From contig NC_043025.1 in NCBI RefSeq assembly GCF_006345805.1, forward strand, positions 1,860,001 to 1,924,000: DNA of 64,000 nucleotides. The letters are read 5' to 3'. Shown piece by piece: positions 1 to 47,875 of the stretch. How positions within the stretch are numbered: position 1 is the stretch's first letter; each line of letters opens with the position of its first letter. Under the pieces are notes generated by a model. The model did not search any database, was not told the DNA's origin, and worked only from the letters and a program-made list of their open reading frames with translations. The position numbers and the translations under genes were made by a program. The stretch is from Octopus sinensis (Eukaryota).

Positions 1-131
1 CTCGGAAATCATGAAATTTAAATCAACTCATTGTTGTTTATTACCAACAACATTTAACGAGGAACTGAGAATTTGATGACCTCATTTTATTATTTTCATT
101 TTCCTATAACAAAAAGAACTTCTTTTCTTAC

Positions 132-203
132 ATTTCAACTATGCTGCGAAGGAATAAGAAAGCGCCATCTTCATATTTTTCTATTAGGTTGTTTTGCAAA
201 TAT
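132..203 (-). CDS. LRR protein, 72-nt LRR exon 6 (YLQNNLIEKYEDGAFLFLRSIVE); gene continues off the left edge
   Basis: Acceptor tttgtctctttttcAG, donor GTAAGA, 72 nt, phase 2/2, LRR consensus retained. Confidence 0.88.
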
Positions 204-551
204 CTGAAAAAGAGACAAATATTACACACTTTAAAATAAGTAAAAATAAATAAATCTGTTTACTCCTGTTTAGTACTAAATTGCGTTTTAGTCAACACTA
301 ACAGGGTAAATGCTGATATTACACACTACAATTGTTTGTTTCTCTTCATAGTTCTGTGGGAAGTGTTGTTTGAACAAGAATAAGTTCCTTCAATCTAATT
401 TAATTATCCTAAGAGAAAATCTGATAACAAAACAGCAACAGATGGAAGGGAATAAAATACAAAAATAACAAAATAACAAGGAGACTTTCTTATGTGCACA
501 ATATGGGTTTTAGTTAACATTCTCATCTATGGTAGAAATATCATTCTCCAT

Positions 552-706
552 ATAGGCATGGTTCTGTGGCAAGAAAATTACTTCTCACATCCATGGATTC
601 TTTAGTCCAACTGTGTGGCACCTTGGACAAATAACATTTACTATAACCTTGGGTCAACTAAGCGTTGTGAGTAAATTTGCTGCAGGAAACTGTGTGGATT
701 CCCTTC

Positions 707-753
<47 letters not shown>

Positions 754-965
754 TGTGTTTGTCTTTGTGTTTATCCCCACCAACGCTTGATGACCAATAT
801 TGGTTTGTTTACGTCCCCCGTAACATAGTGGTTCCGCAAAAGTTACCCGACTGATTAAGTGCCAGGTTTTAAAAATTCAGTACTAAGGACGATGTGTTCG
901 AGGAAACGCTTGGAGGTAGTACTCCAGCATGGCCGCATTGTGATAACTGAAACAAGGAATAGTAA
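552..965 (+). mobile_element. tRNA-derived SINE, family 1 (degenerate)
   Basis: Head ...ctgtggcaag...gtggcaccttgg...actataaccttgggtc, central (TA)n, tail ctccagcatggccgc...actgaaacaag; same layout as many copies later in the window. Confidence 0.8.
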
Positions 966-1279
966 AAGTATATACTCCAGTAGCAGTGTAATGATAAAAA
1001 TGGTTTTCAAAACAATAAACTATTAATTATTGCAATAACATTGACCATCTTCAGACCAGTGCATAACTTTCAGAATCCTATTCAAAGTACACAAAACAAT
1101 GCTCACCTTTTGGTAGAAGATATATACTGGGTACCTATAAATTGACTATAAAAGAAGAACAAGAACAAGAAGAAGGAAAAGAAGACGAAACAACAAAGAG
1201 AAGACGAAGGAAGAAGAAGAAGAAGAACAAGAAGAAGAGGAAAAGAAAGAAGACTAAGAAGAAAAAGGAGAAGAAGAAA

Positions 1280-1310
<31 letters not shown>

Positions 1311-1485
1311 AAGAAGAAGAAGGAGGAGGAGGAGGAGGAGGAGGAGATGTAGAAGAACAAGTAAAACAAGAAGAACAAGAATAAGAAGATAGTGCACTCT
1401 GAAAGTTTATACGTTTCTGAGAGAAAATATATCAGTATCAAAGGAAACATTCAGAAAATAGTATTAAGAAACTGAACGAACTAAC

Positions 1486-1557
1486 AAGTAGTTTAAATTC
1501 GAAAGCCTCGTGAAGGTCCCTTCTTTGATGGTTGAAATTTTGTTGTTCCGCAGATCT
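1486..1557 (-). CDS. LRR protein, 72-nt LRR exon 5 (DLRNNKISTIKEGTFTRLSNLNYL)
   Basis: Acceptor ctttactgctatAG, donor GTTAGT, 72 nt, phase 2/2. Confidence 0.9.
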
Positions 1558-2240
1558 CTATAGCAGTAAAGAAAGAGTAAAATAGATTATATAGAAAATA
1601 TTTGTGATACGACATCAAAAACTGTGGCTTTAGAATTAAATGAAGAAAGAGAAGAGCGTAACGAAAGAAGAAGAAGAAGAAGAAGAAGAAGAAGAAGAAG
1701 AAGAGAAGAAGAAGAAGAAGAAGAAGAAGAGAAGGAGTTGAATGACAATATCGAAACACGAAAGAGAATATTGAAATAAGAAATGAAGAGAGACAAATTA
1801 TAAAATAAAGGAATAATATAGTCACACTTTACACTTATAACTACACTTATTTATGAACATACTCACATACTTCAGCTAAAAATATTTAATGCAAACATGG
1901 AAACTCACAAACGTTACCATTTCTAATACAAATTCATATAAAAGTCATTGGAATTTGAGGATCAAAATTGATTTAGGATGACCTGAAGTGAAACAAAGCA
2001 ACTGCAATAAGGGAACATTAAATTTGTCCTATCATTTCACTTTCTCTCTCTCTTTCTCTCTCTTTCTCTCATTGTGTCTCGCTCTCTTACTCCCTGTTTG
2101 TATCTTCCAAACTCCTGTTCGGTCCCCAAATTTGAATTGATTTGCTTATTGCAGTCTGAACGTTCATACATTTGTGAGTTTATATATCAGCATCATATAT
2201 TACTTTCAGAAATTATTATCAAGAAACTGAACGAACTTAC

Positions 2241-2312
2241 AATTTCGTTAAATTCGAAAGCCCATTGAAGGAACCATCTTTGATGGTCGAAATGTCGTTG
2301 CCGTCAAGATCT
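2241..2312 (-). CDS. LRR protein, 72-nt LRR exon 4 (DLDGNDISTIKDGSFNGLSNLTKL)
   Basis: Acceptor ctttacttctgtAG, donor GTAAGT, 72 nt, phase 2/2. Confidence 0.92.
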
Positions 2313-4061
2313 CTACAGAAGTAAAGAAAGAGTAAAATAGATTAGATGGAAAATATTAGTGATAAAACATCAAACAATATGGCTTTAGAATGAAAGGGAA
2401 AAAAGGAAGACATATAACGTAGAAGAAAAAGAAGAAGAAGAAGAAGAAGAAGAAAAAGAACAAGAACAAGAAGAACAAGAACAAGGACAAGAACAAGAAC
2501 AAGAACAACAACAACAACTAGAACAAGAAGAAGAAGAAGAAGAAGAAGAAGAAGAAGAAGAAAAAGGAGAAGAAGAAGAAGAAGTAGACGAAATAAGAGG
2601 AGGAAGAAGGGAGGAAGGGAGGAGAAAGGGAGGGGGAAAAGGAGAATAAAATGAAGGAGGAGGAGGAGGGCGAAGAGGCGAAAGAGGATAATGCGGGGAG
2701 AAGGAGTAAAAGGAGGGTGAAGGAGGGGAGGCGAGGAGGAGAGAGAAGGAGGGAAGAGAGGCGGGGCAGAATGGGCAGGAGGAGGAGGCGAATGAGAATA
2801 GGAGAAACAAGTAAAAGAGAAAGAAAAAGAAGGAGGAAATTGACAAAGCAGAATGTACAGGAGAAAGTTTCTGAAAAAATAGAAGAAGAAGAAGAAGAAG
2901 AAGAAGAAGAAGAAGAAGAAGAAGAAGAAGAAGAAGAAGAAGAGGAAAAGAAAGAAGACTAAGAAGAAAAAGAAGAAGAAGAAAAGAAGAAGAAGAAGAA
3001 GAAGAAGAAGAAGAAGAAGAAGAAGAAGAAGAAGAAGAAGAAGAAGAAGAAGAAGAGAAGAAGACACATTGAAAATCTTGGTATTCAAGAAGGCGAAACA
3101 GAAAATGTAGTCAAAGAAATAACAGGAGATATTTCAGGGACAGGGAACAAACGTTTGAGGGAGAGAACATGGCTGAAAAATGAGGGAATATACGGACTCA
3201 GAAATCAACATATTTGAATGCACTCATACACATGCTTATATTCATAATATGAACGACGTAAGGTGATACGCACACTCACATTCACACATATTCTCACTCA
3301 CCTGTGTGGAAATATGGCGAGAGAGATTATTAATCTCATATCGCTTAATTGACAGAAGAAAATTATATTAGAAAAGCCCCTCTAACTAGAAATATATCAG
3401 CAGTTAAATTGTATCAGGCCAAATATTCCTGCTTAAATGTGCAGTAAGGATTTCAGGTTTACAGAGAGAATGTATGTGACGACATTATTCGTATATATTT
3501 ATTTTCCGCTTCCACTTCAGTTGGTTTATCACTTAAATAAAGTGATGTGAATGAAAAAGTCGAAGTTGAATGATAATATCGAAACACGAAAAAGATTGAA
3601 ATAAGAAATGAAGGATACAAATTATATAATAAAGAATAATATATTCACATTGCACACGGAACTACACTTATATATGAACATACACACATACTTCTGCTAA
3701 AAATATTTGATGCAAACATGTAAACTCACAAATGTTACCATTTTTAATACAAATTCAAGTAAAATCATTGAAATTAGGGGCTCAAAAATGAGTTATGGTG
3801 ACACGAATTGAAACAAAGCAACAGCAATAAAGGAACATTAAAATTGTCCAATTATTTCACATTCTCTCTCAATTTCTCCCTCTTTCTCTCACTATGTTTC
3901 GCTCTCTTACTCCCTCTTTGTATCTTCCAAACTCCTGTTCGGTCCCCAAATTTGAATTGATTTTGTTTAGTGCAGTCTGAAAGATTATTGGTTAATGAGT
4001 GTATATATCAGCATCAAATATTACTTTCGGAATATAGTATCAAGAAACTGAACGAACTTAC

Positions 4062-4133
4062 AATGACGTTAAATCGGAAAGCCTCGTGAATACATCTTCT
4101 TCGATGGTTGAAATTTTGTTGTTCCACAGAATT
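4062..4133 (-). CDS. LRR protein, 72-nt LRR exon 3 (ILWNNKISTIEEDVFTRLSDLTSL)
   Basis: Acceptor ...ctgctatAG, donor GTAAGT, 72 nt, phase 2/2, no stops. Confidence 0.92.
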
Positions 4134-4854
4134 CTATAGCAGTAATGAAAGAATAAAAATGATTATATGAAAAATAATTGTGAAAAAACATCAAACAAGG
4201 GGGTTCAGAATGAAAGGAAGAAAAATGAAGACAGATAACGACGACGAAGAAGGAGGAGGAGGAAAGGAGGAAGAGGAGGAAGAGGAGGGGAGGAGGAAAG
4301 GAGGAGGGGTGGAGTATAGGAGAAGCGGTTGAGGAGGAAGGAGGAGGAGAAGGAGGAGGAAGAGTAGGAGGAAGAGTAGGAGGAAGAAGAGGAGGAAAGG
4401 AGGGGAGGAGGGAGGAGGAAGGGGAGGAGAAGCATAAGAAAAATGAAGAAGAAAAAGGAGGAAAAAAAGAAGAAGAAGAAGAAGAAGAAGAAGAAATAAA
4501 ACAAGAGGAAATTATTTCGGCGGAACTGTGGATAAATAACCACACGTTACCACAAGAATCAAGAGAACAATGTGAAACGAAACAGTAGCTAAAACATAGG
4601 TATTATAATAACACTACAGACACACTCATACATATGTGAACATACACGTTTTCAGGAATAAAATTTTGATGCAGACGATTATCAACTGCCAGACATTGTC
4701 ATGTTCAGACACAATCAAATAAATATAACACGAATATGAAAAGTGATTATAACTTCAAGTAATAGGGAGTGAGAATAAATAGAAATCAGGGAATATTTAA
4801 TTTAAAGACACATTATATTCCTCATGTATAAACGACAACATTGAAAGGACTTAC

Positions 4855-4926
4855 AATTCCTGTAAGTTCTGAAGGCCTTGAAACATCTCTTTTTCAATCC
4901 TCGAAATTTTATTGTCCTTTAGAGAT
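4855..4926 (-). CDS. LRR protein, 72-nt LRR exon 2 (SLKDNKISRIEKEMFQGLQNLQEL)
   Basis: Acceptor gttttctgcttcAG, donor GTAAGT, 72 nt, phase 2/2, typical LxxLxLxxNxI repeat. Confidence 0.92.
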
Positions 4927-5588
4927 CTGAAGCAGAAAACAATATTGCTTAGTTTGACTTAATATGGAATTGCAATAAAATATTGAATATTTTTCTTTAT
5001 GTATAGGAACAATATTACAGGAAAATACAAGAAGAAGAAGAAGAAGAAGAAGAAGAAGAAGAAGAAGAAGAAGAAGAAGAAGAAGAAGAAGAAGAAGAAG
5101 AAGAAGAAGAAGAAGAAGAAGAAGAAGAAGAAGAAGAATGGAATTGCAATAAAATAATGGAATAATATAGTCACATCTCACACAGAATTACACTTAGATA
5201 TGGACATACTCACATACTTCTGCTAAACATATTTGATGCAAACATGTAAACACACAAACGTTACCATTTCTAATACAAATTCATATAGAAATCATTGAAA
5301 TTTGAGGCTCGAATATGAGTTATGGTGACGCGAATTGAAACAAAGCAACTGTAATAAAGGAACATTAAATTTGTCGTATTATTTTAATTTCTCTCTCAAT
5401 TTCTCCCTCTTTCTCTGTTTGTGTCTCGCTCACTTACTCCCTCTTTGTATCTTCCTAAATCGTGTTCGGTCCCCAAATTTGAATTGTTCTTGTATAGTGC
5501 AGTCTGAAAAATTATTGGGCAATGTGTGTATATATCAGCGTCAAATATTACTTTCGGAATATAGTATCAAGAAACTGAACGAACTTAC

Positions 5589-5660
5589 AATTGTTTTAAA
5601 TTCTTAAGCCCCGTGAATACACCTTCTTGGATGGTTGCAATATTGTTATCCTGCAGATCT
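5589..5660 (-). CDS. LRR protein, 72-nt LRR exon 1 (DLQDNNIATIQEGVFTGLKNLKQL)
   Basis: Acceptor ctttactgctatAG, donor GTAAGT, exactly 72 nt, phase 2/2. Joins the previous exon to give ...VEYL-DLQDNNI, a canonical first LRR. Confidence 0.92.
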
Positions 5661-6164
5661 CTATAGCAGTAAAGAAAGAATAAAAAGATTAGACGGAAAA
5701 TATTTGTGATACGACATCAAAAACTGTGGCTTTAGAATGAAAGGAAGAAAAAGAAGAGAGCAGGAGATGAGGAGTGGAGGAGGAGAGGAGGAGAAGGAGG
5801 ACGAGGAGGAGAAGAAGAAGAAGAGAAGAAGAAGAAGAAGAAGAAGAAGAAGAGAAGAAGAAGAAGAAGAAGAAGAAGAAGAAGAGAAGAAGAAGAAGAA
5901 GAAGAAGACGAAGAATGTCTTAATGTGGCAGCCGTTTCGTGTTTATTTCTTACTTGACTTGCACAACCTCGAGTATCCGCTTCGCCTATCTACGTATCAA
6001 CACACATATCCACACAAATACACGCACTTATACGCACATACATACGTATGCTCTCAGAAATATACACACATATGTATATCTACCTCTGGGTGCGGGAATG
6101 TGTGCGAACCTCGTCTCTGTAGTGATGTCCTTTTATCTGTCGATATAGTTTATTATCGAATCTA

Positions 6165-6800
6165 AAGGTGTTGTCTTCTAGTTCCAGGTGTGTCTTTGGA
6201 AATGCGTTTTGAAGCGTTCGTCCATCTGTCCGTTATGCTTTTCTACCAAGTGTTTGATTGCTTCCCGGCCCAAAGTCTGATGTATTAGTATAAAGATTAG
6301 TCAAAGATTGTAGATATAATACGTTCTGGAATGTGTTTGAGGAAATCCATATCGTCTCGGGTATAGCTGGGCATTAATGGGCATAACGGTTTGAGGAGTA
6401 TATCCAAAAGATGGCTCAGTTGTTGTGTTGGGGCTCAAGGTCCAGCAACTGTTGGTCTCAATTTGATGTCAGTAGGTCTTAGTATTTTTATCTGCTGGTT
6501 CCTGCATTTTGGAGCATTCGTAGATCTTGGGTGATCCATAGGAATTACTCTCTTTCATTACAGAGCTGCATAAATAATCTTTCTCTTTATCTGTGAACGA
6601 ACATTGGTATTCATTTATCAGACTTTTGAGTATATTCATTATTACTTTTTCCGGGTATCTTGGTTTTTCCTAGTAGCAGGTCTGTTTCCAATATTTTATC
6701 TTTATAGTAGTCGTGGTCCGTGACTGCTATCACCCTTCCCTAATCGGTTTCTTTTAGGATGGTTGAATTGTCATTCTTCAGTTTGTAAGGCTTCCTTTTC
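6165..6800 (-). mobile_element. Penelope-like element reverse transcriptase fragment (disabled) in LRR-gene intron 1
   Basis: Minus strand reads IKLRPTVAGP*APTQQLSHLLDILLKPLCPLMPSYTRDDMDFLKHIP...(T)NLYTN...LGREAIKHL, matching PLE RT motifs RP-I-V, PSYIRD and FDVxxLYTNI; contains stops and frameshifts. Confidence 0.75.
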
Positions 6801-7629
6801 TTCTTCACGAAGGTTCTGTTCGATTTACTGGGAGTTTATTATATAAGATATAAAACAGATCTAAGTCACTGCGTAAAGTATGAATGAAAAACACACATGC
6901 ATGTAAAATATGAGAAAATAATGGATGTTCAAAATATTTGTGATTTGAATTAGATTTACAAAGCCTTCGTATTCAGTATTCAGTGGAAGATATTTTTATC
7001 ATCTCAGAAGTCAGCTTTATTTATAAATATCTTGTTTCTGTCCAATGAGCATTTCATTCGCTATTACACTTTGTTGTCAAAAGTAATTTACCTTTGCAAA
7101 ATAAACTCCTTTCCTTTGCTTAGTTGATGCATAAAAGTTCTTCACAAAAATAAATAAACCCCCAAAACTTCAAGACTGAAATAATAGACTAGGAAGGAAA
7201 GCATAACAGAAATGGAAAGGGATTTATTAATAGAACTGGTGATGGTAGAGTGGGGAAACCCTTATTTAATTTTGAGTTATGTGCTACAAAGGAGAACAAC
7301 CTTACATGGTGATTTAACTGGTTAAGAGTGTTATTTAAAAAAGGGATGAGACAACATACATTGCCTTAGTTTTTCGGTCTTTTTTTAGTCCTTACTCTTG
7401 CTGTATTAAATCTCAGTTTGTTCCCATTATTAACCACATATGCTAAATCCTTCATCTCCTAAATAGCATCCCTGCTCATCATTCCTGTAAACAGCTCAAA
7501 CGGAATATTAATGATATCTGTCTCACAAGTATTGGAGATCTTGCAGGAGTTATAAAACTTGTCTGATTCTTTCTCCAAAATCGATAAAATAAAAAGTGTG
7601 GAATTTTAACTCAGGTCACAGACAACTGG

Positions 7630-7830
7630 ACAATATACTGCAAGGTGTCTTATTCGAGGTCCTCATAGTTGCATTTGTTCATTGAACTGTTATGGTTCTT
7701 TATTGATCTCGGAAATAAATGACGCAAGGTTGACCTTGGCGGGATTTGATGTCAGATTGCCGTGTGTCAGAACGCAATGTATTCTACTAGACGGTCAACA
7801 GATTTGTGCCAATCCTCGCTTAAGTTGTGA
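7630..7830 (-). mobile_element. SINE family 2, degenerate
   Basis: Reverse complement resembles ggcggcgagctggcagaa...aattccgccgaggtcgactttgcctttcat copies at 29059 and 47410. Confidence 0.6.
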
Positions 7831-8489
7831 ACGATGAGAATATCTAACTTATTAAACAGAACTTCAACTTTACTATTCAACATCTTGAGTTATACCAAAT
7901 TTAGGAATTCCATTATTGAAACTTTTCTCTTTATTTTACATTGGAATTTCTCATTTGGTCAAAACGTTCCAAATTTTTTGAGAAATAGATCTGATCGAAT
8001 GAATTGATCCACTTTAGTATTAGAATATGTTATTAAAACAGAAAGTTTAAGGTGATTAATGCAATGATGCAAGCCAATTAACTGGAAGTAATCACCTGGA
8101 AGAGCAATGTGTTGCAACAGAGTATTTGTTATGATTTATGTATCAAATAATTACTCTTTTTTATTCTATTCCATTTCTTGAGACGTTAAATTTTAATAAT
8201 GCACTTAAAAATTACGTAAGTTTTCAGGTGAACGGGGATGCATCAAACAGCCGAAACTTCAATTAAGCTTGCATAATTTTGTAATAAGTTTTATTGTGTT
8301 CATGACAGGGTAAATTTTACTGATGACATTCTATCAAAAATAAATTCCTCATAATTTGTTCAAACAGCACTATTTTGATTTCTTCACTTTTTTAAGAATT
8401 TGGCAATTTAAGCAGATCTCGTCATTATCTGCAGTTTAATCCATCTGTATCATTTTTAATTATAAAAATAATCATTTCTTCTATAGGAA

Positions 8490-8682
8490 CAAACCTGAAA
8501 TTTGGGGAAAGGGACAAGTCCTTTACGTTGATCTCAGAGATAAATTGCTATTTATTTTACCGATTCCAAAAGAATGAAAAGCAAAGTCAACCTCGAGAGA
8601 ATTTAAAATCGAAACGTAAAGACGAACGAAATACCGCTCAACATTTTGTCTGGCGTGCACAACGATTCTGATAGCTCGCTGC
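8490..8682 (-). mobile_element. SINE family 2
   Basis: Reverse complement gcagcgagctatcagaatcgttgtgcacgccagac...gaggttgactttgcttttcattc matches the family-2 head and body. Confidence 0.75.
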
Positions 8683-9140
8683 ATATTCTATTATAAAACT
8701 AACACAAACAATAATTAACAATTATTCTGTAACAAGATCAAATGATATTATATTATATTACTGTAACTATAAGCAACAATTCAACTAATTAATGATATAA
8801 TATAACTATGTGGAATACACGTTTTCTTAGCACTAAAGTTTTTATACTGTCCGTTCATTGAATATACCGTAAGATTTGATAAGTTCAGACAAATAACATC
8901 AAAGTCAGATACTAGTCAGATCCAATCACTGTGTATGAGATGTTATATATTATAAATTCAATATGGTAGGAAACAGTTTATTTGACTTCACAGCAGGTAA
9001 CATATCGATTTGTTTTACTCTAACATAAGATTGTGCTTAAAGCTGTGAGATAAACAGCATAAGCGATTAGCTGAGAACATAATCAATGAAAATTTAAAAT
9101 ATTGGAAGTGGAAAATACGTAGAAAGTGTCAAATACTTAC

Positions 9141-9331
9141 AAATATTCAACATTCGTCGGAATTGGTTGTGGAATTGATGCTAGATTGCGATTGTCACAA
9201 TTTATTTTTGTTGTAAGTGAATTGCAAGTACATATCTTGCATATATCTGAATCAGCTTGAGCCTCCAAAAACAATATCGTGCACAGTATCAACACAAGAG
9301 ACCGTCTATATGATACTATGTGGCGAAACAT
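9141..9331 (-). CDS. LRR protein, first coding exon: signal peptide + LRRNT cysteine cap
   Basis: Translates MFRHIVSYRRSLVLILCTILFLEAQADSDICKICTCNSLTTKINCDNRNLASIPQPIPTNVEY(L): hydrophobic leader then CxxCxC...C-L..IP..IP cap. Ends TT|GTAAGT (phase 2). An acceptor ttttcttcttttacAG at 9352-9353 puts the exon start at 9351, 20 nt before the ATG. Confidence 0.9.
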
Positions 9332-9573
9332 ATTGCCAGGCGTAGATTTATCTGTAAAAGAAGAAAATAGGAAATGTCAGAGACTTCAACGTTATTAACT
9401 TCAAATTGCAGATTCTCCGAAGGAACTACAATTCACCCCTGTTCCACATGACAAATATATTCTTGTTTTCATGATTGGATATTTAAAGCTAAAAACTTAA
9501 ATTTCGATAAATTAGTGTGAAGAAATTTATTAAATATTATAGCTTTAACGCGTAATAATATCAAAGAATATAC

Positions 9574-9619
<46 letters not shown>

Positions 9620-10115
9620 AACTCACTCCTACACACATCTGTAACCATACTCGGGGGGGGGTCTAATATATATACAAAACTAACGAACCATGAGTTTCGT
9701 GGACCCTAAATACGCAGTGGTTATAAACCCGGTTGGGTCGTTGAATCCGATGGGACCCCACAAGCAACTGTATTGTAACGAAGGTTTGTTCCTTTACCCC
9801 AGTTTTAGAAGCGGTCATACACATTTTTCCTTAAATACACTTCATGATTTCATTTTTACTTACTTTTCTTTTACTGAGAACACGAATAAAGCATGAACGT
9901 AAATGAACAAATAAAAATGGACGTACATCAAAAGAAGCAAATTTCTTTGCGGACACAAATAGACACAAGAAAATAAAGAAAGTGGATAAGGAAACAACAA
10001 CAAAAGAAACATTGACAACAACAGAAATTAAAAAGCTCTGAAAATTATGTATACACTAATATCTATTTATCTAACAATTTATAAATCTCTCTCCCCTTAC
10101 ACACATACACACACA

Positions 10116-13300: not shown

Positions 13301-14444
13301 ATGCATCAATAAATTAACATTGATATTTTTTCACCGTTGTTGCAATCATCTGAAATGGAACTGTCAAAGCGCGATATTCGAAAAATTTTCTATTCAGCAT
13401 CAAAAAAGGATGTAAACAGCTGAAACTGCTGACGATTTCAACGAAACATTTCATGAGGAAATAACCAGTGAGTGGTCAGCTAGAAAATGGTTTAAACGAT
13501 TTAGCAGTGGAAACCTGAAGATCATAAGCGTAGTGGTCCCCGTCTGTCATCGATGACGGTCAATTGAAGACCGTCATTGAGAAAGACCCACGTAAAACCA
13601 CTCGAGAAATGGCAAAAGTACTTCAAATTAGCCAGAAAATGCCTGAAACCATTTGCATGCGATCGGAAAATCAGAAAAGCTCGACAAATGAATACCTCAC
13701 CATTTGAATGAAAATCAGAAAATGTGAACTTATGAAGTGTGCTCGTCGCTTCTTCGCCGAAACCAGACCGACCCATTTCTTGACCGTATTTGCGATGAAA
13801 AGTAGATTCTGTATAGTAATAGAAAATGTTTTTTCGCAGTGGATGGACCCAAATGAAGCACCGAAAAGCTTCCCTAAACCCGATCTCTTCAAAAAAGAGG
13901 TTACGGTGATTGTTTAGTGATGTGCTGTTGGACTCATCGACTATACCTTATTAAAACCCCGAAAAACCATTACTGCAGAAACATATTACCAAGAAATTGC
14001 CAATATGAACGAAAAACTGCTACTCCTCTGTCTCAGACTGGTCAACAGAAGAGGCCCAATCATTCTTCATGACAATACTCGACCACACGTTTCGCTAATG
14101 ACGCCCCAGAGGTTTAGAGAATTTGGCTACGAAGTTCTTCCCTACTCAGCCTATTCCCCAGACCTTTCTCCCAACGACTACCACTTTTTCAAGTATCTTT
14201 ATGGTTTCCTTCGAGAGAAGGAGTTCAAAAATCAAACCGATGCTGAAAGCGCGTTCAAAGAGTCCATCAGCTCCAGAACTCCAGATTTTTATGTTAACAG
14301 AATAAACAAACTTTGTAACTCATTGGCAAAAATGTGTTTATAGTAATGGTACAGACTTTGATGAATAAAATGTCCGCATTGCTGAAATACATTGTGATGA
14401 ATTTCATGTTTCAAAACGTTGCTTACTTTTTACTCAGCCTGATA
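13300..14444 (+). mobile_element. mariner (DD34D) transposon, disabled transposase; 3' TIR present, 5' TIR not found
   Basis: MELSKRDIRKIF at 13355, KWFKRFSSG, LHDNTRPH, YSPDLSPNDYHFFK; ends gcttactttttactcagcctgaTA. Confidence 0.92.
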
Positions 14445-14683: not shown

Positions 14684-17600
14684 CAAGTGTCTGTAACCTG
14701 TGGCAAACGTGTCATGTGTAGCACGCGAAACAATTCACAATGGCATGCACACCACTTGGCAAAAACTAAAAGTAAATTTTTATTCATAACTAAATCTGAG
14801 GAAGCGACATCATAATAATTAAATTACATATCTTTTTTACGATCCATCTATTCTAGCCTAAACTATCTGAAGTTAGCTGTATTTGGTAGTATTACATTTC
14901 CTTAAAAATATAGTACTACTGAACACAATTTTGATACGAAATAATGAATGTTAGCACAATTAATTTGTTTGTAAGCTGGTGCCGAAAGCATTCATATGTA
15001 CCCTATCACTGAAGCCGGGAGCTAGAGGTGCGAACGCTTATTGTTTCGAACTCGGCTATATATTTAGCAGTGCAGATTATAATATGTTGAACTTGGTTAA
15101 CCACTTTACAGCAGCCAGTCTAAATAAAGACACTCTTTAAAATGGACTCCTACATTGCGGGTCGTCTATAAGTAGACGCTTTTAAAATTATTCTTTCATT
15201 TTGGAAAGAAAAAGCGGTAACGAGTAGGATTTTGAAAAGGAAATAAACATGAAAAGCCAAAATTAGTTATTTTTTTTTCTTAGGTTATAGTTATTTTCTT
15301 CGTGAGTCAAGTTGTCTGATCTTTTGAGTTTTTTTTTTTGTTTATTCATATCATCTATTTTAATCTAATTATTTTATTATTACAAAAATTAATTCATTAA
15401 ATTAATTCCGTTCTTTTTTACTATTTATTTTATTCTAATTATCTTTATTTAAATATTTTTATTTTCATTTTTAGAACCTGATTTAAGGGTTATACACCAG
15501 TCATATCAATTATCAATATATAGTGCCCCAAATTGAATAACAAAGGACCAAAATTTGACGTTCGTTCATTTCAAGATTTCTGGAGCACTGAGTATGGATT
15601 TGTATAACAAAATCATCGAGCTGTGTGTGCGTTCTGCTGTGAATTTGTCGTATGTCGTACATCAAGTGTACAAAGACACTATCAAACTAGACACCAGACT
15701 ATATTTAAAAACGCTGATGATAAAAGGTAAGTCATAAAACGGGCTAATTCTAGTTACAAAAAAAGCACTTCTATTTTTGTTCAAATGCTTGGAACCAACA
15801 ATGAAGCCAAATAATGTAGTTACACAATTGCTCAATGTATAGCTGAGAAAGGTAAACCTTTTACAGCCGGAGAATTTATCAAAAAAACTTTTCGAGAATT
15901 GCTAAAATTTTGTTCAGTGATTAAGCAAACGCTGAACAAATACTGTCTCGAATTCAAGAAATACCAACTTCTGCATGATCAGTTGAGAGACGTATAACTG
16001 ATATCGATGAAAACATAACAATAAAACAAAAAGTTGGATTACAAAATGATGCTGCATTCAGCGACCCCTTTCGATGAAAGTACTGACGTGAATGACATGG
16101 CGCACCTAGCAATTGTTGCAAGATATTGTGACAATGATCGTATTTACGAAGAATCATGTTGTTTGATTATTCCTCTTACCAATACATCAGACATTCTGAC
16201 TGCATTTCTAAATTATTTCGAAAATCAAGCCATTAATACAAATAAAATATTTTGTATTACTACTGGTGGTGCACGTGCAATGGTTGGAAAGGAAAAAAGA
16301 TTTATTAAGCGTCTTGAAAATCACATTTCACGCAGTGTAATGTGTTTTAATTGCATTGTACATCGGGAAAATTTAGTTGCAAAACTTTCGTCACAAAGCT
16401 TCAGTTCTGTCGTGGAGACTGTTGTTAAAATAGTTAACTTCATGGTTTCTCGCTCTTCACTGGCTCACAGACAATTTAAGTCTCTTCTGCAAGAACTGGA
16501 CAGCGAATATGCAGACTTCCCACTTCACAGTAAAGTCCTGCAGCGTAGACTCGGTTAAAATTCCCCTCTCCCATATATTTATATACGTGCATTCGAACGT
16601 AGCAGGGAACAGCTAGCCTTTTGCCGCTATTTCGATCCTGTTGTGTCCACTACTCTGATTAGTTGGTATTGGCGCAATTTGTAGGGCCGAATTGCCGCGT
16701 ATAACCTGTCGGAGTCCCTAAATACGATCACCTGCGACAGCCTGTTCACTACCCCGTTTTGGCCTACTTCTCCTTATAAAAAATCAGCTTTTTCTCCTTT
16801 CGAGGTCTTTTGGTTCCAGACCTTTTAAGGACTAGCCTCTGACCACAAAGACACAGCCAGTTCCAGAGACTTACCAACTTTGTCCAACAGCATTCCAACA
16901 ACCTCCATCTTCGTCGCTATCACCATGTCCTTAACGTCTTCAACATCATCTCTCTACGTACACAGCTCTGCAAGCGATGCACCCAGGTTCCAACACTTCA
17001 CTGTTCATGAATTACTTCATCATGGGTCAACAACAAATATACAACCAGTATGAATTCCTGTACAAGTTACCCAGGCAGCAGCATCACAGCCACGACATCA
17101 CGTTCAACATATACCTCTAATTGTCTCCTACATCTATGAACCCATACGCATACATTCTGTTCTCATGACGGCATGTCTATCGTTCAGTATACATGACACA
17201 TCTGTTAACATATCAATAAATCTTCTTTTAATCATTCTACGCGGTTGTCTCCTTTTTCCATCAGGCAAATAGATGGTACTATCAATTTTCTCTTTTGTGA
17301 GGGCTGTGTGGTGTGGTACTAAAGAACCATTCTTGTCACCTCGCATCGCACGGTCCTTACAGTCCGTTGATTTTGTCGGGTAATGTTTTGAACAGATTTG
17401 TATCATGCTTAGAAGAAATCAAAATATTTCTTGAAAGGAAAGAGATGCCAGAATTGAACAACGAAGACGAGTTATTTAAACTGATACTTCTAACTGACAG
17501 TCACTTGAATGATTAAAATTTGCAAACAGTACTTGATCTTTTTGAATACTGGGAAGGATTTTTGTTAAAATCAGACTTTTTTTGGCGTGATACACTTAGC

Positions 17601-30026: not shown

Positions 30027-33000
30027 TATGTTTGACTTTTGCTTTATATTTGTACAAGTTGGCTCCAAGTCTCACCCAGAGACCTCAAGAGACAACAGGG
30101 TTGGAAGTTCATGTTGTTGTTATGCCTAGTGTGCCATATATTTGGGGGTGGGGATGTTGTACTAATGAATGTCTAAAAAGAAAAAAAAAGTTTTTTTTTT
30201 TTTTTTTAAAAAAACCGAAAAATGTTTGTTTTAAACCTTGAGATTACATAGAGAGTATTTTGCGTAGATATGAGCAGTTCCCATGAGCACTATCTTTTGA
30301 ACTTCTGCCATTTTTGGGTTTCCTGGTATCTGAGTTAGGTAGCTATCAACCCCTTTTGCTATCATTCCCAGGGCACCTATGACAACAGGTATTGTTTTAG
30401 TCTTCAGCTTCCACATTTTGCTGATTTCTATTTCAAGATATTTATATTTGCTCAGTTTTTGGTAGGTCTTGACAGATACGTTTATATCGATTGGGACAGT
30501 CATATCAATGAGGAGGCATGTTCTTTGTTTGAAGTTTTTCAATATGATGTCTGGCCTATTTGCATCTATCTTCCTGTCAGTTTGAATGGTGAAGTTCCAC
30601 AGGAGTGAGATGTGGTCATTTTCAAGCACTGGGTGTGGTTTGTGTTCCCACCAGTTTTTTTCATGGGGCAAATCCAGGTTTTTACAGATTACCCAGTGAA
30701 TATATTGTGCAGCTCTATCGTGCCTGTTGAGATACTCTGTAGGCGCTAGAAGACTGCACTTGGAGACCACATGGTCAATGGTTTCATTTTGTTGCTTGCA
30801 TACACGACACGTTGGACTGCTTCTGATCTTTAATATGTTGGCCTGGTAGTTTTCTTCTTGTTGGTAGGCATTGATCTTGAGCTGCTATGATAAACCCCTC
30901 TGTTTCAGATTTTAAGCCAGAGGTCATTAGCCATTGATGGGTCAGGGCTTTGTCGATATCTGCATTATTCGCTCTCTTTGGGTATTTGCCATAGAGAGGT
31001 TTTTCTTGCCATTTATTATTCAGAATATCTAAGGCCGCAGTTTTTGGCACGGGTTTTCATGCGCCTAGCTTTTTCTGTGCTTGTTTCTTGTATATCTATC
31101 TCTAATTCCGAAATTGGTTGTATTCGGATTCACTTAGATATTCCTTTGCCTGTTTTGTGACTGAGTATGATGCTTTCTTGTTTTCATGTTTTGAGACAGG
31201 TTTTAGCATCCAGTCCTCAGAGTTTTTCAGGTAGGTGTCTAGGCCAATTGTAGCAATCTTCATTGTTATTGCCAGTTGCAAAAGACCACGGCCTCCCTCT
31301 TTTCTTGGCAGATAGAGTCGTTCTGTATCTGCCTTAGGGTGGCGCATTCTATGCATAGTCAACAGTTTCCTTATTTTTCTGTCGAGCTGACATATTTCAG
31401 TAATTGACCAGTTAACAATATTGAAACTGTAAGTCACGACTGGTATAGCTAATGCATTGATTGCTTCGATCCTGTTTCTTGCATTCAGCTCTGTCTTGAG
31501 TATTGCTCTTACTCTTCGATAGCATTCTCTCCTGATCCTTTCCTTCATCTCTGAATGCCTTATTCCGTTCCCTTCAATTATCCCTAGGTACTTGTAGCTC
31601 TCCGCTGGGTCTAGTTATTTTATGACATTCTGTTGGTCAAGGTTAACGTTAGATGTTTCTGTCATTTTTCCTTTGATAAAGGTAGCCTTTGCACATTTAT
31701 CGAGGCCGAATTGCATTCTGATGTCGTCACTGAATTGTTTGACTATCGCTAGTAAGCCCTTGAGTTGTTGATCATTTTTTGCAAAAAGCTTTAAATCATC
31801 CATGTAAACGAGATGATTTATATTTTTATCAACATTTTATACCCGTACTGCGCGTCATTGAGCAGCTTTGAGAGAGGTATTAAGGATAAACAAAAGAGGA
31901 GTGGTGACAGTGAGTCACCCTGGAAAATGCCACACGAAATTTTTACATCACCAGCATTTAGGGATTCACTGTCACTGTTCAGAGTTAGTGTGGTTCTCCA
32001 TGATCTCATACTTACAGTCAAGAAGTTTCGCAGAGTTGGTGCTATCTTATACATTTCAAGGCATTTCCTAATCCAGCTATGTGGTAGGCTATCAAAAGCC
32101 TTTTAATAGTCTATCCAGGCTATTGATAAGTTTTTGTGTCGTTTGTGACAATCTTCTTATTGATGAGTAGTTGGTCTTTACAGCCGTAGGATCCACGTTT
32201 ACATCCTTTCTGTTCATTAGGGAATATGCTGCTGTCTGTTAAAAAACTATAGGTATATTCCGTCAGGACAGATGTTAGTGTTTTGTACATAGTTGTTAAG
32301 CAGGTTATGGGTCTATAGTTTTTTGGTTCATTTGTTTCTTCACTTTTTGGAAGCAGGAATGTTAACCCATTAACTAGCCAAGGAGGCATCCTACTAGGGT
32401 GTTGCAAAACATCATTGTACAGTTCTGTTAGCAGTTCATGGCTCTCTGGGAAGGCTTCAGCCAGAAGTTAGGAATTTTATCCTTTCCTGGAGACTTCCAT
32501 TTGCTTGACCTCCTGAGAGCAGATCTTATATCTTCTATTACCTACCGACACCCTCCCACTTTTGCTCTTCTAAGGGGTCTAGTTCTGTAGATATTCTGTC
32601 CAATCCAGGGGGCCTTTTCGTTGTGTGTTTTTTCTTCTGCCCAGATTTTTTCCAAAATCTCTGCACTTCTTCTTTTGATGGTACAGACCCTGCAGTAAAC
32701 GCTGTTTTTCCTATCTTCCTGTAAAATTCTTGGTGTTATTTTTGAACATGTTGTTGTCCTTGAAAATCTAACACGCTTTTCATACCTCGCTATGCGGGCA
32801 GCTTTGGCAGATACCTTTTGTTTGATGGTTTCTATGGTGGCATCAATATCAAGTATAGTTTTCATATTGTATTTTTTCAGTAATTTTTGGGTTTTTGTAG
32901 GTTTCGTAATCTTGTGAGCCTTAAGGTTTTTCAAATATTCAATGTCAGATCTAAATATTTTAATTTGTTGTTGCAGACGCTCTTGGCAAGAAGGCTTTTG

Positions 33001-34964: not shown

Positions 34965-35038
<74 letters not shown>

Positions 35039-35329: not shown

Positions 35330-35382
<53 letters not shown>

Positions 35383-35398
35383 TATTATTATTATTATT

Positions 35399-47779: not shown

Positions 47780-47827
47780 CATTATTATTATTATTATTAT
47801 TATTATTCTTATCATTATTATTATTAC

Positions 47828-47860
<33 letters not shown>

Positions 47861-47875
47861 CATTATTATTATTAC

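What the first reader, a model, noticed from the sequence alone, without database searches (positions are those of the whole stretch)
132..9351. Modular LRR protein gene built from one-repeat, frame-neutral 72-nt exons, expanded by intron-exon cassette duplication
Seen: a signal peptide/LRRNT exon, then six exons of exactly 72 nt, all phase 2/2, each one LRR; the spliced product reads continuously. Four exons lie in copies of one cassette of up to about 600 bp, so the repeat array grew by local duplication. Established: symmetric one-LRR exons are common in LRR genes and can be skipped without frameshift. Inference: this could be a combinatorially spliced and/or copy-number-variable recognition receptor, conceptually like variable-LRR immune receptors. 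None of these exons appears as such in the ORF track.
Basis: partly seen in the sequence, partly recalled or inferred. Interest (0 to 1): 0.85.

Follow-up and report, generated by a model that had tools for sequence, protein, structure and literature searches.

The report
Modular LRR exons, octopus receptor family
This is the front half of an already annotated octopus gene from a large, octopus-specific family related to adhesion receptors; each leucine-rich repeat sits in its own 72-base exon, and across the family the predicted binding-face residues vary far more than the rest of the repeat.

Summary
On the minus strand lie a signal-peptide/LRRNT exon (9141-9351) and six exons of exactly 72 nt, all AG/GT-bounded and phase 2. 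The spliced product is letter-for-letter part of RefSeq XP_036370679.1 (LOC115225969, Octopus sinensis).

The gene continues left of the window: an LRRCT exon, four tandem Cys-rich (probably Ly6/uPAR-like) exon pairs, one more module, then an assembly gap.

It is not a Slit or LRRC4 orthologue. It belongs to an octopod multigene family (at least 64 first exons and about 170 cassette candidates in this genome). Full-length members are adhesion GPCRs (LRR + GPS + 7tm_2), and this fits the octopus-specific expansion described by Ritschard et al. 2019.

The intron-exon cassettes are real. However, cassettes in other genes are as close as those within this gene, so recent local duplication is not supported.

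Across the family, variability is concentrated at the concave-face positions (B-type exons: dN/dS 5.65 against 0.41 elsewhere). The closest solved folds are lamprey VLRs. RefSeq isoforms of two paralogues differ in 24-aa steps, though some look like mapping artefacts.

For this gene, no splicing data could be reached and only one isoform is annotated. Exon modularity of LRR genes is a known kind.

The parts
9690..9824 (-). Upstream exon used by the RefSeq models. It is probably 5' UTR; the models start translation here at an upstream ATG, before the signal peptide.
   Evidence: tblastn of P0032 residues 1-45 maps here at 100%. The signal-peptide Met is at 9331.
9141..9351 (-). Exon 1: acceptor at 9351, ATG at 9331, signal peptide, then the LRRNT cysteine cap and the start of LRR1. 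It ends in phase 2 (..TT|GTAAGT).
   Evidence: Pfam LRRNT scores 20.1 bits, below its cutoff. At least 64 homologous first exons exist in the genome.
5589..5660 (-). LRR exon E2, 72 nt, phase 2/2, type A cassette (DLQDNNIATIQEGVFTGLKNLKQL).
4855..4926 (-). LRR exon E3, 72 nt, phase 2/2, type B cassette (SLKDNKISRIEKEMFQGLQNLQEL).
   Evidence: Its intron flanks group with the B cassettes of O. vulgaris at 100/100 support.
4062..4133 (-). LRR exon E4, 72 nt, phase 2/2, type A cassette (ILWNNKISTIEEDVFTRLSDLTSL).
2241..2312 (-). LRR exon E5, 72 nt, phase 2/2, type A cassette (DLDGNDISTIKDGSFNGLSNLTKL).
1486..1557 (-). LRR exon E6, 72 nt, phase 2/2, type A cassette, donor GTTAGT (DLRNNKISTIKEGTFTRLSNLNYL).
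132..203 (-). LRR exon E7, 72 nt, phase 2/2, type C, the last repeat before LRRCT (YLQNNLIEKYEDGAFLFLRSIVE).
   Evidence: The exon plus its flanks (window 1-400) has at least 43 copies in the genome at 69-100% identity.
5149..5819 (-). A-type intron-exon cassette copy around E2.
   Evidence: Self-BLAST gives 85.1% over 678 nt to the copy at 3624-4298. It is also part of the repeat finder families D4-D6.
3624..4298 (-). A-type cassette copy around E4.
1736..2453 (-). A-type cassette copy around E5.
   Evidence: Self-BLAST gives 83.1% over 721 nt to 3564-4274.
1390..1737 (-). Shorter A-type cassette copy around E6.
   Evidence: It is 78-82% identical over 318-340 nt to the other three copies.
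5810..5915 (.). (AAG)n array, which is (CTT)n on the sense strand, about 150 nt upstream of the E2 acceptor.
   Evidence: Tandem Repeats Finder.
5029..5138 (.). (AAG)n array, about 103 nt upstream of the E3 acceptor.
4251..4429 (.). (AGG)n array, about 118 nt upstream of the E4 acceptor.
2421..3064 (.). Two (AGA)n arrays (2421-2609 and 2881-3064), beginning about 109 nt upstream of the E5 acceptor.
1665..1734 (.). (AAG)n array, about 108 nt upstream of the E6 acceptor.
1152..1389 (.). (AAG)n array in the E6-E7 intron, about 97 nt downstream of E6.

Best explanation
Window 132-9351 (minus strand) is the 5' half of RefSeq gene LOC115225969 of Octopus sinensis.

What it encodes (shown): a signal peptide and a capped LRR solenoid of LRRNT, six 24-residue repeats and LRRCT. 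The LRRCT exon lies 8.6 kb left of the window. Four tandem Cys-rich, probably Ly6/uPAR-type three-finger modules follow, then one further module, and then the assembly breaks.

What family it belongs to (shown): an octopod-specific multigene family whose full-length members are adhesion GPCRs, built as LRR ... GPS-7TM, one with a Death domain.

Where the exon design comes from (shown): the one-repeat 72-nt phase-2 design is the ancestral building plan of the whole family. Three cassette types (A, B, C), each with its own conserved intron flanks, recur in at least 170 copies across dozens of genes in at least two Octopus species.

How arrays of different length and order arose (inferred): by unequal recombination or gene conversion among these cassettes over the family's history. 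They did not arise by a recent duplication inside this gene.

How it works (inferred from LRR structural knowledge): the LRR arc is an extracellular binding module. Its specificity is set by concave-face residues x5, x7, x8 (exon positions 1, 3, 4) and x2, x3 (positions 22, 23). Those positions are hypervariable on an otherwise nearly invariant repeat and carry excess non-synonymous change, so paralogues probably bind different ligands.

Whether this copy has a 7TM (inferred): by analogy with its 96-98%-identical inverted twin, which runs to a stop codon without GPS or 7TM, this copy is probably a secreted, 7TM-less member. It may alternatively be truncated.
For: Gene model and extent:
- Exon anatomy and open spliced frame.
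- Exact identity to the RefSeq models P0060 and P0032.
- Downstream LRRCT, four LUa/LUb exon pairs and the 'GWTKSF' exon mapped by tblastn.
- An assembly gap at window -41859..-41760, with no family exons in the next 88 kb.

Family size:
- At least 64 first-exon homologues.
- 171-172 first-look cassette candidates; all 40 scored are at least 82% identical over exon plus intron flanks.
- At least 43 type-C copies.

Adhesion-GPCR membership of relatives:
- P0085, P0088, P0091 and P0098 combine LRR_8, GPS and 7tm_2; P0084 combines LRR_8 and 7tm_2 (truncated model, no GPS hit); P0085 also has a Death domain.
- 7tm_2 exons lie 20-28 kb downstream of family exons at many loci.
- Source names are ADGRG6-like, GPR126-like and ADGRA3.
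- This matches the domain description of the octopus-specific 'group 3' expansion.

Same design in O. vulgaris: ten exact 72-nt AG/GT phase-2 LRR exons with the same acceptor contexts.

Diversification at the binding face:
- Entropy at positions 1, 3, 4 is 3.0-3.4 bits and at position 23 is 2.6 bits. It is at most 1.7 bits at the other positions, except position 14 at 2.3 bits (57 distinct A units).
- B exons: concave codons dN 0.756 and dS 0.134, against 0.058 and 0.140 for the other codons.

Fold: the AF2 model has pLDDT about 90 or more across the LRR domain. The top Foldseek hits are VLRs, with Slit2 D3 and Nogo receptor further down the same list.

Twin copy: it runs to the stop '...TEDRTAETNF*' without a 7TM.
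Against: - No transcript or protein evidence for this gene could be examined. RefSeq models are predictions.
- The 3' end is cut by an assembly gap, so a GAIN/7TM part on an unplaced scaffold cannot be excluded.
- The twin copy is decaying: its E7 donor GT is lost and its LRRCT is degraded. This copy could likewise be on the way to pseudogenisation.
- The three-finger assignment of the Cys-rich modules is marginal. The best PDB profile hit has E = 0.012, Pfam finds nothing, and AF2 confidence is below 50.
- The dN/dS values are pooled, non-independent pairwise counts on 7 and 9 short exons. For A exons dS at concave codons is itself high (0.76), so micro-conversion or saturation contributes.
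- At nucleotide level, exons within this gene are merely no better conserved than their flanks (71-75% against 75-77%).
Confidence: 0.78

Rival explanations
1. The symmetric 72-nt exons of this gene are combinatorially skipped, so that one gene yields a repertoire of LRR arcs of different length and composition. The long (CUU)n tracts upstream of each exon might regulate this.
For: - All six exons are frame-neutral.
- RefSeq lists 13 isoforms for one paralogue (409/385/361/337 aa) and 7 for another (525/501/477 aa). They differ only by whole LRR units, mostly the first 0-3 repeats.
- An O. vulgaris model skips an intact 72-nt exon present in the DNA (compared).
- Pyrimidine microsatellites sit 100-150 nt upstream of each of E2-E6.
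- Splicing of LRR exon modules is documented for Slit and NLRP3.
Against: - Only one isoform is annotated for this gene.
- Four of the 13 paralogue isoforms contain hybrid repeats, for example YLSENNISTIKEG|AFTGLSHLKEL. These are what reads from near-identical paralogous exons would produce when mis-mapped.
- No RNA data were accessible.
- The role of the (CUU)n tracts is pure inference.
Confidence: 0.25
2. The locus is a non-functional or truncated duplicate: a 5' gene fragment created by a large inverted segmental duplication. It would be a decaying by-product of family turnover, or be incompletely assembled.
For: - The RefSeq model ends in a short exon 650 nt before a 100-N gap, and no family exons follow for 88 kb.
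- The inverted twin, 192 kb away and 96-98% identical, has lost the E7 donor and most of its LRRCT and is annotated as two separate genes.
- No O. vulgaris or O. bimaculoides protein is closer in the LRRCT-LU region (at most 88%) than O. sinensis paralogues are (86-89%), so turnover is fast.
Against: - Seven consecutive exons plus the LRRCT and eight LU exons keep an open frame and canonical splice sites.
- The duplicate scaffold carries the identical chain.
- The truncation coincides with an assembly gap, so it may be technical.
Confidence: 0.3
3. It is an ordinary conserved LRR gene, a Slit, LRRC4, LRRC15 or chondroadherin orthologue, as the automatic RefSeq names of its relatives suggest.
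For: - Source names of relatives include 'slit homolog 1-like', 'LRRC4-like' and 'chondroadherin-like'.
- Slit2 D3, chondroadherin and NGL-3 appear among the structural matches.
Against: - There is one LRR domain only, followed by Cys-rich modules, not four LRR domains with EGF, LamG and CTCK.
- Outside Octopus the best matches to the LRR part are at most 42% identical generic LRR proteins.
- Isoforms of one gene receive different vertebrate names, which shows that the names are best-hit artefacts.
- There are dozens of near-identical paralogues.
Confidence: 0.03
4. It is a VLR-like system in the strict sense: an incomplete germline gene completed somatically by copying flanking LRR cassettes.
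For: Lamprey VLRs are the top structural matches. The repeats are 24-aa modular units with hypervariable concave positions, and the genome holds many cassettes.
Against: - The germline gene is complete. Every cassette is a bona fide exon with AG/GT sites in a colinear array that splices into an open frame.
- Cassettes elsewhere lie inside other complete genes.
- Nothing suggests somatic rearrangement.
Confidence: 0.02

Closest known systems
Octopus-specific adhesion-GPCR expansion ('group 3' of Ritschard et al. 2019, Proc Biol Sci, PMC6408891)
   Same: - Full-length relatives of this gene combine LRR, GPS and 7tm_2, and one has a Death domain. The paper lists exactly these extra domains for group 3: LRR in 5 of 22 sequences and one Death domain.
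- The genes are co-localised in clusters and restricted to octopods.
- The paper reports positive selection.
   Different: - The paper analysed the 7TM part and does not describe the LRR exon cassettes, the hypervariable concave positions or the Cys-rich modules.
- This particular gene has no assembled GPS or 7TM, so it cannot be placed in their 7TM tree.
Slit genes (one 72-nt exon per LRR; Little et al. 2002, as cited in Hoss et al. 2019, PMC6642158)
   Same: - Capped LRR domains of 24-residue repeats, encoded by short repetitive LRR exons, with proposed alternative use of those exons.
- Slit2 D3 is among the structural matches, with a target TM-score of 0.76.
   Different: Slit is a conserved single-copy-type gene with four LRR domains plus EGF, LamG and CTCK. 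Here there is one LRR domain, a different downstream architecture, dozens of young paralogues and concave-face hypervariability.
Vertebrate ADGRA2/ADGRA3 (GPR124/GPR125), the LRR-bearing adhesion GPCRs
   Same: An N-terminal LRR domain with LRRCT lies ahead of a hormone-receptor-like region, GAIN/GPS and a class-B 7TM. One octopus relative is named ADGRA3 by its source. The vertebrate architecture is given from my own knowledge.
   Different: - Vertebrate ADGRA has a few LRRs followed by an Ig domain and exists as 2-3 conserved genes.
- The octopus family has 2 to 15 or more LRRs followed by a Cys-rich three-finger-like module, and is massively expanded.
Agnathan variable lymphocyte receptors (VLR)
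   Same: - The best structural match is VLRA.R5.1, PDB 3m19, with E 8.5e-12, target TM-score 0.77 and 32% identity.
- Both have LRRNT, 24-aa LRRs and LRRCT, with diversity concentrated on concave beta-strand positions of modular units.
   Different: - VLR diversity is somatic, produced by cassette copying into an incomplete gene.
- Here diversity is germline, through many complete genes and possibly splicing.
- There is no VLR stalk or GPI region, and no homology beyond the shared LRR class is claimed.
NLRP3 and other human LRR genes with strict exonic modularity (Hoss et al. 2019, PMC6642158)
   Same: LRR modules are encoded by exons that can be skipped in frame. Alternative splicing of an LRR exon changes the interaction surface.
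   Different: Those are a different LRR class (RI-like, longer exons) in intracellular proteins. Splicing is shown experimentally there but not here.
Invertebrate LU-domain proteins with non-standard architectures (Acta Naturae 2026, PMC13719153)
   Same: That survey reports mollusc genes with an LU domain in the extracellular part of 7TM receptors. Its figure legend for the domain architectures lists LRR, GPS and 7TM-GPCR domains among the domain symbols.
   Different: I could not see the figure, so I cannot say whether the exact LRR-LU-GPS-7TM combination or octopus genes are shown. The word 'octopus' does not occur in its text.

Membership tests
Capped extracellular LRR domain (LRRNT, 24-residue 'typical' LRRs, LRRCT; the Slit/VLR/Nogo-receptor class) | Tandem repeats matching LxxLxLxxNxLxxLxxxxFxxLxxL | tested here: met
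   Pfam LRR_8 E = 9.7e-43 and LRR_4 E = 1e-22 on the 207-aa spliced product. There are six 24-aa units.
Capped extracellular LRR domain (LRRNT, 24-residue 'typical' LRRs, LRRCT; the Slit/VLR/Nogo-receptor class) | N-terminal four-cysteine cap (LRRNT) | tested here: inconclusive
   Pfam LRRNT scores 20.1 bits, below the 25.8 cutoff.
Capped extracellular LRR domain (LRRNT, 24-residue 'typical' LRRs, LRRCT; the Slit/VLR/Nogo-receptor class) | C-terminal cysteine cap (LRRCT) | tested here: met
   The next exon (C29:1851252-1851409, 158 nt, frame-compatible) encodes ...NNNLMKCGCHL...C...C. AF2 pLDDT is 86-94 through this part. No Pfam LRRCT hit was listed.
LRR genes with one repeat per symmetric exon (Slit-type exon modularity) | Each repeat in its own exon, with length a multiple of 3 and identical intron phase on both sides | tested here: met
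   Six exons of 72 nt, all phase 2/2, all AG/GT. Ten more are in an O. vulgaris family gene.
LRR genes with one repeat per symmetric exon (Slit-type exon modularity) | Documented alternative inclusion of the repeat exons | not testable with these tools
   No RNA data were available. There are indirect hints only: RefSeq isoforms of two paralogues in 24-aa steps, some with hybrid repeats. This gene has one annotated isoform.
Slit orthologue | Four LRR domains followed by EGF repeats, a laminin-G domain and a C-terminal cystine knot | tested here: not met
   There is a single LRR domain. Downstream exons encode Cys-rich LU-like modules. No EGF or LamG hit was found in any family protein scanned.
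Adhesion GPCR (class B2) | GAIN/GPS autoproteolysis region | tested here: not met
   This refers to this locus. No family exons lie in the 88 kb beyond the last mapped exon, and an assembly gap intervenes. The twin copy reaches a stop without GPS. Relatives P0085, P0088, P0091, P0098, P0086 and P0128 do have GPS.
Adhesion GPCR (class B2) | Seven-transmembrane domain of the secretin/adhesion type (7tm_2) | tested here: not met
   This refers to this locus. The nearest 7tm_2 exon on the right strand is about 146 kb away. Relatives P0085, P0088, P0091, P0098 and P0084 have 7tm_2 with E between 1e-23 and 1e-41. The gene is therefore a relative of adhesion GPCRs by its ectodomain, and is not itself shown to be one.
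Ritschard et al. 'group 3' octopus-specific adhesion-GPCR expansion | Placement in their 7TM phylogeny; octopod restriction; LRR and Death as accessory domains | tested here: inconclusive
   Domain content and taxon range of the relatives agree: Octopus species and Argonauta. No tree against their sequences was made, and this gene lacks a 7TM.
Agnathan VLR system | Incomplete germline gene completed by somatic copying of flanking LRR cassettes | tested here: not met
   The germline array is complete, colinear and spliceable, and is annotated as such.
Agnathan VLR system | Sequence diversity concentrated on concave beta-strand positions of 24-aa modules | tested here: met
   This holds at family level, among germline paralogues. 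Entropy is 3.0-3.4 bits at x5, x7, x8 and 2.6 bits at x3. dN/dS at these codons is 5.65 for B exons and 1.16 for A exons, against 0.41 and 0.75 elsewhere.
Ly6/uPAR three-finger (LU) domain (for the modules downstream of LRRCT) | Conserved cysteine framework ending in CCxxxxCN | tested here: met
   Among 20 family modules, the cysteines including C80, C81, G83, C86 and N87 are invariant. Each module is split over two exons.
Ly6/uPAR three-finger (LU) domain (for the modules downstream of LRRCT) | Significant sequence or structure match to known LU domains | tested here: inconclusive
   - A profile search against PDB gave Lypd1 (6zss) as best hit, E = 0.012 over the full length. All 8 hits are three-finger proteins.
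- Pfam found no hit.
- AF2 pLDDT is below 50 in two attempts.

The most novel reading that the evidence does not exclude
The octopod LRR-adhesion-GPCR family may be a germline-encoded, VLR-like recognition repertoire. It comprises at least 64 genes and about 170 or more interchangeable one-repeat cassettes.

On this reading, binding faces are diversified in three ways: by cassette shuffling between paralogues, by positive selection at five concave-face positions per repeat, and by combinatorial skipping of the frame-neutral exons. The skipping might be regulated through the conserved (CUU)n tracts upstream of each exon.

Because the family is reported as expressed in suckers, skin and axial nerve cord, such a repertoire could underlie contact chemosensation or sucker-skin self-recognition rather than classical immunity. 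7TM-less members such as this gene would act as secreted binders or decoys.
Probability: 0.2. Interest if true: 0.8.

Novelty: new member of a known kind. Interest (0 to 1): 0.45.

Why it matters
As stated, the finding is a correct description of an ordinary design. One-repeat symmetric LRR exons are known from Slit and NLR genes. This gene is already in RefSeq, and its family was reported as an octopus-specific adhesion-GPCR expansion.

I could not find the following described in the searched literature:
- The family is built from a few intron-exon cassette types repeated at least 170 times.
- The repeats are nearly invariant except at the five predicted ligand-contacting positions, where non-synonymous change is in excess.
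- The fold is closest to lamprey VLRs.
- Long (CTT)n tracts precede the LRR exons in two species.

If the family proves to be a diversified surface or secreted recognition repertoire in suckers and skin, it would offer concrete candidate molecules for octopus contact chemosensation and self-recognition. It would also be a germline counterpart to VLR-type diversity.

This particular copy is a weak representative. Its 3' end is unassembled, it may lack a 7TM, and it has no expression evidence that I could reach.

Tried and rejected
1. Slit, LRRC4 or chondroadherin orthology was rejected on architecture and taxon range.
2. An LGR-type (rhodopsin-class) LRR-GPCR was considered because of the 72-nt phase-2 exons. 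It was rejected because the relatives' 7TM is class B, 7tm_2 with GPS.
3. VLR-type somatic assembly was rejected because the germline gene is complete.
4. Recent duplication within the gene was tested against genome-wide cassette identities and an intron-flank tree. It is not supported.
5. 'Exons evolve faster than introns' at nucleotide level: an early look suggested it. A proper alignment gave 71-75% for exons against 75-77% for flanks, so I claim only 'no better conserved'.
6. I expected the module after the LU domains to be SEA-like. AF2 gives a confident ferredoxin-like beta-alpha-beta-beta-alpha-beta fold, but Foldseek finds no significant match and no SEA domain in the top 50, so I dropped the label.
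7. Pfam does not recognise the LU-like module, and HRM is only sub-threshold in relatives.
8. Two AF2 runs failed to model the LU-like module.
Exact look-ups for P0041 (O. sinensis) and P0034 (O. vulgaris) found nothing on record. Paralogue DNA therefore came from one O. vulgaris locus only.
10. My first two regex scans for 72-nt exons missed the real exons, because the LRR motif is split across exon borders. The third scan found them.

Full report
WHERE AND WHAT. The window is G000:C29:1860001-1924000 of a 2.72-Gb, 13,516-contig genome. Protein matches and the contig length of 17,062,404 bp identify it as Octopus sinensis. The feature lies on the minus strand.

OBSERVATION. Reading the sequence and extracting the candidate exons gives the following.
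- Exon 1 has its acceptor at 9351, its ATG at 9331 and its donor after 9141.
- It encodes MFRHIVSYRRSLVLILCTILFLEAQA|DSD (a signal peptide, by inspection) and then CKICTCNSLTTKINC (LRRNT).
- Six exons of exactly 72 nt follow at 5589-5660, 4855-4926, 4062-4133, 2241-2312, 1486-1557 and 132-203.
- All have AG acceptors and GT donors. All begin with the third base and end with the first two bases of a Leu codon (phase 2/2).
- The splice product is open for 207 aa and scores LRR_8 E = 9.7e-43.
- It is an exact substring of two RefSeq models. These are XP_036370679.1 (LOC115225969, 731 aa, on this contig) and XP_029654389.2 (588 aa, on a 44-kb duplicate scaffold).

The four cassette copies are also real. 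Self-BLAST gives 80-85% identity over 678-916 nt for three copies and 78-82% over 318-340 nt for the fourth.

THE REST OF THE GENE. I fetched 130 kb to the left of the window. In frame after the exon at 132-203 come, in order:
- an LRRCT exon (C29:1851252-1851409...NNNLMKCGCHLPAFVKYIKK...C...C);
- four tandem copies of a two-exon Cys-rich module at window coordinates about -15.3/-17.4, -22.6/-24.6, -27.5/-29.5 and -32.4/-33.9 kb, whose second exons are 93-98% identical to one another at protein level while the first exons are more divergent (71-77% to the first copy) and whose intron phases are compatible;
- a 'GWTKSFVFRLIF...' exon at -40.1 kb;
- the RefSeq terminal exon at -41.05 kb;
- a 100-N assembly gap at -41859..-41760, with no further family exons for 88 kb.

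An inverted twin copy lies at C29:2,061,298-2,115,779.
- It is 96-98% identical and colinear over the LRR region and has the same six LRR exons.
- Its last LRR exon has lost the GT donor and its LRRCT is degraded.
- It then has three Cys-rich modules and continues through further exons to the stop '...TEDRTAETNF*', without GPS or 7TM.
- RefSeq splits it into two genes.

THE Cys-RICH MODULE.
- It has an invariant cysteine framework ending in CCxGxxCN.
- A profile of 20 family modules hits only three-finger proteins in PDB. The best is Lypd1, E = 0.012 over the full length, followed by activin-receptor ectodomain, SLURP-1, Lypd6 and snake toxins.
- Pfam finds nothing and AlphaFold2 models it poorly.

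I call it LU-like, with moderate confidence.

The following module folds confidently as a ferredoxin-like beta-alpha-beta-beta-alpha-beta unit with no significant PDB match.

FAMILY.
- Outside Octopus, the LRR part finds only generic LRR proteins at 42% identity or less.
- The LRRCT-LU part finds 28 proteins, all from O. sinensis, O. vulgaris or O. bimaculoides apart from one MetaClust entry whose cluster holds O. bimaculoides records.
- An exhaustive HMMER search seeded with a family member returned longer relatives.
- P0085 (1283 aa), P0088, P0091 and P0098 combine LRR_8, GPS and 7tm_2. P0084, a truncated model, combines LRR_8 and 7tm_2 without a GPS hit. P0085 also has a Death domain.
- Their sources name them GPR126/ADGRG6-like or ADGRA3. 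One relative is from Argonauta hians.
- In the genome, 7tm_2 exons lie 20-28 kb downstream of family exons at many loci on C29, C27 and unplaced scaffolds.

This fits the octopus-specific adhesion-GPCR expansion 'group 3' of Ritschard et al. 2019. That paper reports LRR in 5 of 22 sequences, one Death domain, gene clustering, positive selection, and expression in axial nerve cord, suckers and skin.

Family size in this genome:
- at least 64 first-exon homologues, 31 of them at least 78% identical;
- at least 43 copies of the last-LRR cassette;
- 171-172 first-look candidates for the A-type cassette, of which all 40 scored are at least 82% identical over exon plus 100-nt intron flanks.

DID THE ARRAY GROW LOCALLY?
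- For the cassette around 1486-1557, the best matches outside the locus (89, 88, 87, 86% ...) exceed its identity to the three sister cassettes in the same gene (78-82%).
- For the cassette around 4062-4133, another gene's cassette (88%) beats the best sister (85%).
- A maximum-likelihood tree of intron flanks only separates A-type from B-type cassettes with 100/100 support. It does not group this gene's four A cassettes apart from those of an O. vulgaris gene.
- The exon at 4855-4926 is a B-type cassette, and the exon at 132-203 is a third, C-type cassette.

The intron-exon unit of duplication is therefore real. It is a family-wide, old building block, reshuffled among genes. It is not evidence of recent growth of this particular gene.

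BINDING-FACE DIVERSIFICATION. I cut the family proteins into exon-register units.
- Among 57 distinct A-type units, entropy is 3.0, 3.2 and 3.4 bits at unit positions 1, 3 and 4. It is 2.6 bits at position 23 and 2.3 bits at position 14. All other positions are at most 1.7 bits, and many are about 0.
- The 16 distinct B-type units show the same pattern.
- In the LxxLxLxxN motif these positions are x5, x7, x8 and x3. By established LRR structural knowledge these are the solvent-exposed residues of the concave beta-sheet.
- I used nucleotide sequences of 16 exons from this gene, its twin and the O. vulgaris locus L027. Pooled Nei-Gojobori counts for B exons give dN 0.756 and dS 0.134 at the five concave codons, against 0.058 and 0.140 at the other 18.
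- For A exons the values are 0.881 and 0.760 against 0.180 and 0.240.
- Between this gene and its twin, 10 of the 11 exon differences fall in the first 22 nt of two exons, as clustered multi-base changes.

These counts are descriptive: the pairs are not independent, the exons are short, and conversion is possible. They agree with diversifying change at ligand-contacting positions.

FOLD. AlphaFold2 with a 29-sequence family alignment models the LRRNT-LRR-LRRCT part at pLDDT about 90 or more. Foldseek against PDB ranks lamprey VLRs first (3m19: E 8.5e-12, target TM-score 0.77, 32% identity). VLR-derived repebodies and other designed LRR proteins rank beside them, and chondroadherin, NGL-3, Nogo receptor, Slit2 D3 and LGR4 follow further down.

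SPLICING. No RNA data were reachable.
- RefSeq gives this gene one isoform.
- A paralogue on a 52.7-kb scaffold has 13 isoforms of 409, 385, 361 or 337 aa.
- Another paralogue has 7 isoforms of 525, 501 or 477 aa.
- Decomposed into units, the isoforms differ only by presence or absence of whole LRR exons, mainly the first 0-3.
- Four of the 13 contain hybrid units joined at ...IKEG|..., the point where the near-identical exons carry an internal AG|GT. These could be cryptic splices, or artefacts of reads from paralogues mapped across repeats.

I therefore treat the isoform lists as a hint, not as proof.

MICROSATELLITES.
- Each of the five internal LRR exons has a 70- to 650-nt (AAG)n or (AGG)n array, which reads (CTT)n on the sense strand, 100-150 nt upstream of its acceptor.
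- Of 14 perfect runs of eight or more units in 194 kb, 10 lie in window 1281-5906 and 3 more lie in another intron of the same gene.
- In the O. vulgaris locus, all 58 such runs lie on the sense strand within the LRR-exon region, and none lies elsewhere in the 82 kb.
- Their role is unknown. Possibilities include splicing control by pyrimidine-tract-binding proteins and promotion of recombination.

COMPARISON WITH WHAT IS KNOWN. Exon modularity of LRR domains, and its potential for alternative splicing, is established for Slit and NLR genes (Hoss et al. 2019 and Little et al. 2002 therein). LU domains in the ectodomain of mollusc 7TM receptors were noted in a 2026 survey. I found no paper describing the cassette structure, the concave-face hypervariability or the (CTT)n tracts of this octopus family.

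VERDICT. The gene is an annotated and possibly truncated or 7TM-less member of a known octopus-specific adhesion-GPCR-related expansion, built on a known kind of exon design. The inference of local duplication is not supported.

Noticed in passing
window 1152-5915; also L027 7352-25984: Long (AAG)n/(AGG)n arrays, reading (CTT)n on the gene's sense strand, sit 100-150 nt upstream of each internal LRR exon. They are almost confined to the LRR-cassette introns: 10 of 14 perfect runs in 194 kb here, and all 58 in the 82-kb O. vulgaris locus. Their function is unknown.
   Followed up: partly
left of the window, C29:1825950-1844660 (window about -15.3 to -34.05 kb): The two-exon Cys-rich (LU-like) module is tandemly quadruplicated in units of about 4.3-7.2 kb. 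The second exons are 93-98% identical at protein level and the first exons about 71-77% to the first copy, with compatible phases. The RefSeq model has four such domains in a row, so module duplication in this gene is more recent here than in the LRR part.
   Followed up: partly
C29:2061298-2115779 (+), 192 kb to the right of the gene's first exon: There is an inverted, head-to-head twin of the whole gene, 96-98% identical over the LRR region. It has lost the donor of the last LRR exon and most of its LRRCT, and is annotated as two genes (LOC for XP_036370680.1 and LOC115226131). It supplies the only view of a complete 3' end, which reaches a stop after '...TEDRTAETNF' with no 7TM.
   Followed up: partly
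window 4917-4926 and 1536-1548, compared with the twin: Differences between this gene and its twin in LRR exons are clustered multi-nucleotide changes at the very start of two exons (S-L-K to H-L-Y, and RNNKIS to RRNNIA). Exon 1 and two other LRR exons are identical. This looks like micro-conversion from other paralogues or selection at binding-face codons.
   Followed up: partly
left of the window, C29:1818141-1818240: A 100-N assembly gap lies 650 nt downstream of the RefSeq terminal exon. The annotated 3' end of LOC115225969 may be an artefact of this gap.
   Followed up: no
RefSeq isoforms of a paralogue on a 52,752-bp scaffold (P0041, P0061, P0063, P0066, P0072): Several annotated isoforms contain hybrid LRR units joined at ...IKEG|..., where the near-identical exons carry an internal AG|GT. 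These are either cryptic in-exon splicing or mis-mapped reads from paralogues.
   Followed up: partly
window 30231-37399 and 49488-52867 (-): Two copies of the same non-LTR retroelement, with reverse-transcriptase ORF fragments that are nearly identical (for example 35807-36868 and 49488-50537). They are broken by stops.
   Followed up: no
window 13921-14343 (+) and 16025-16558 (+): A mariner/Tc1-like transposase remnant (...HDNTRPHV...YSPDLSPNDYHFF...) and a hAT/ZBED-like ORF fragment.
   Followed up: no
window 47690-48880: An extremely AT-rich low-complexity block (GC 0.24 in the 48-50 kb bin). It gives long poly-N, poly-I and poly-Y 'ORFs' in several frames and is not coding.
   Followed up: no
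relative P0085 (O. bimaculoides, 1283 aa): One full-length family member carries a C-terminal Death domain after the 7TM (Pfam E = 3.3e-6). This is an unusual cytoplasmic tail for an adhesion GPCR and matches a remark in Ritschard et al. 2019.
   Followed up: no
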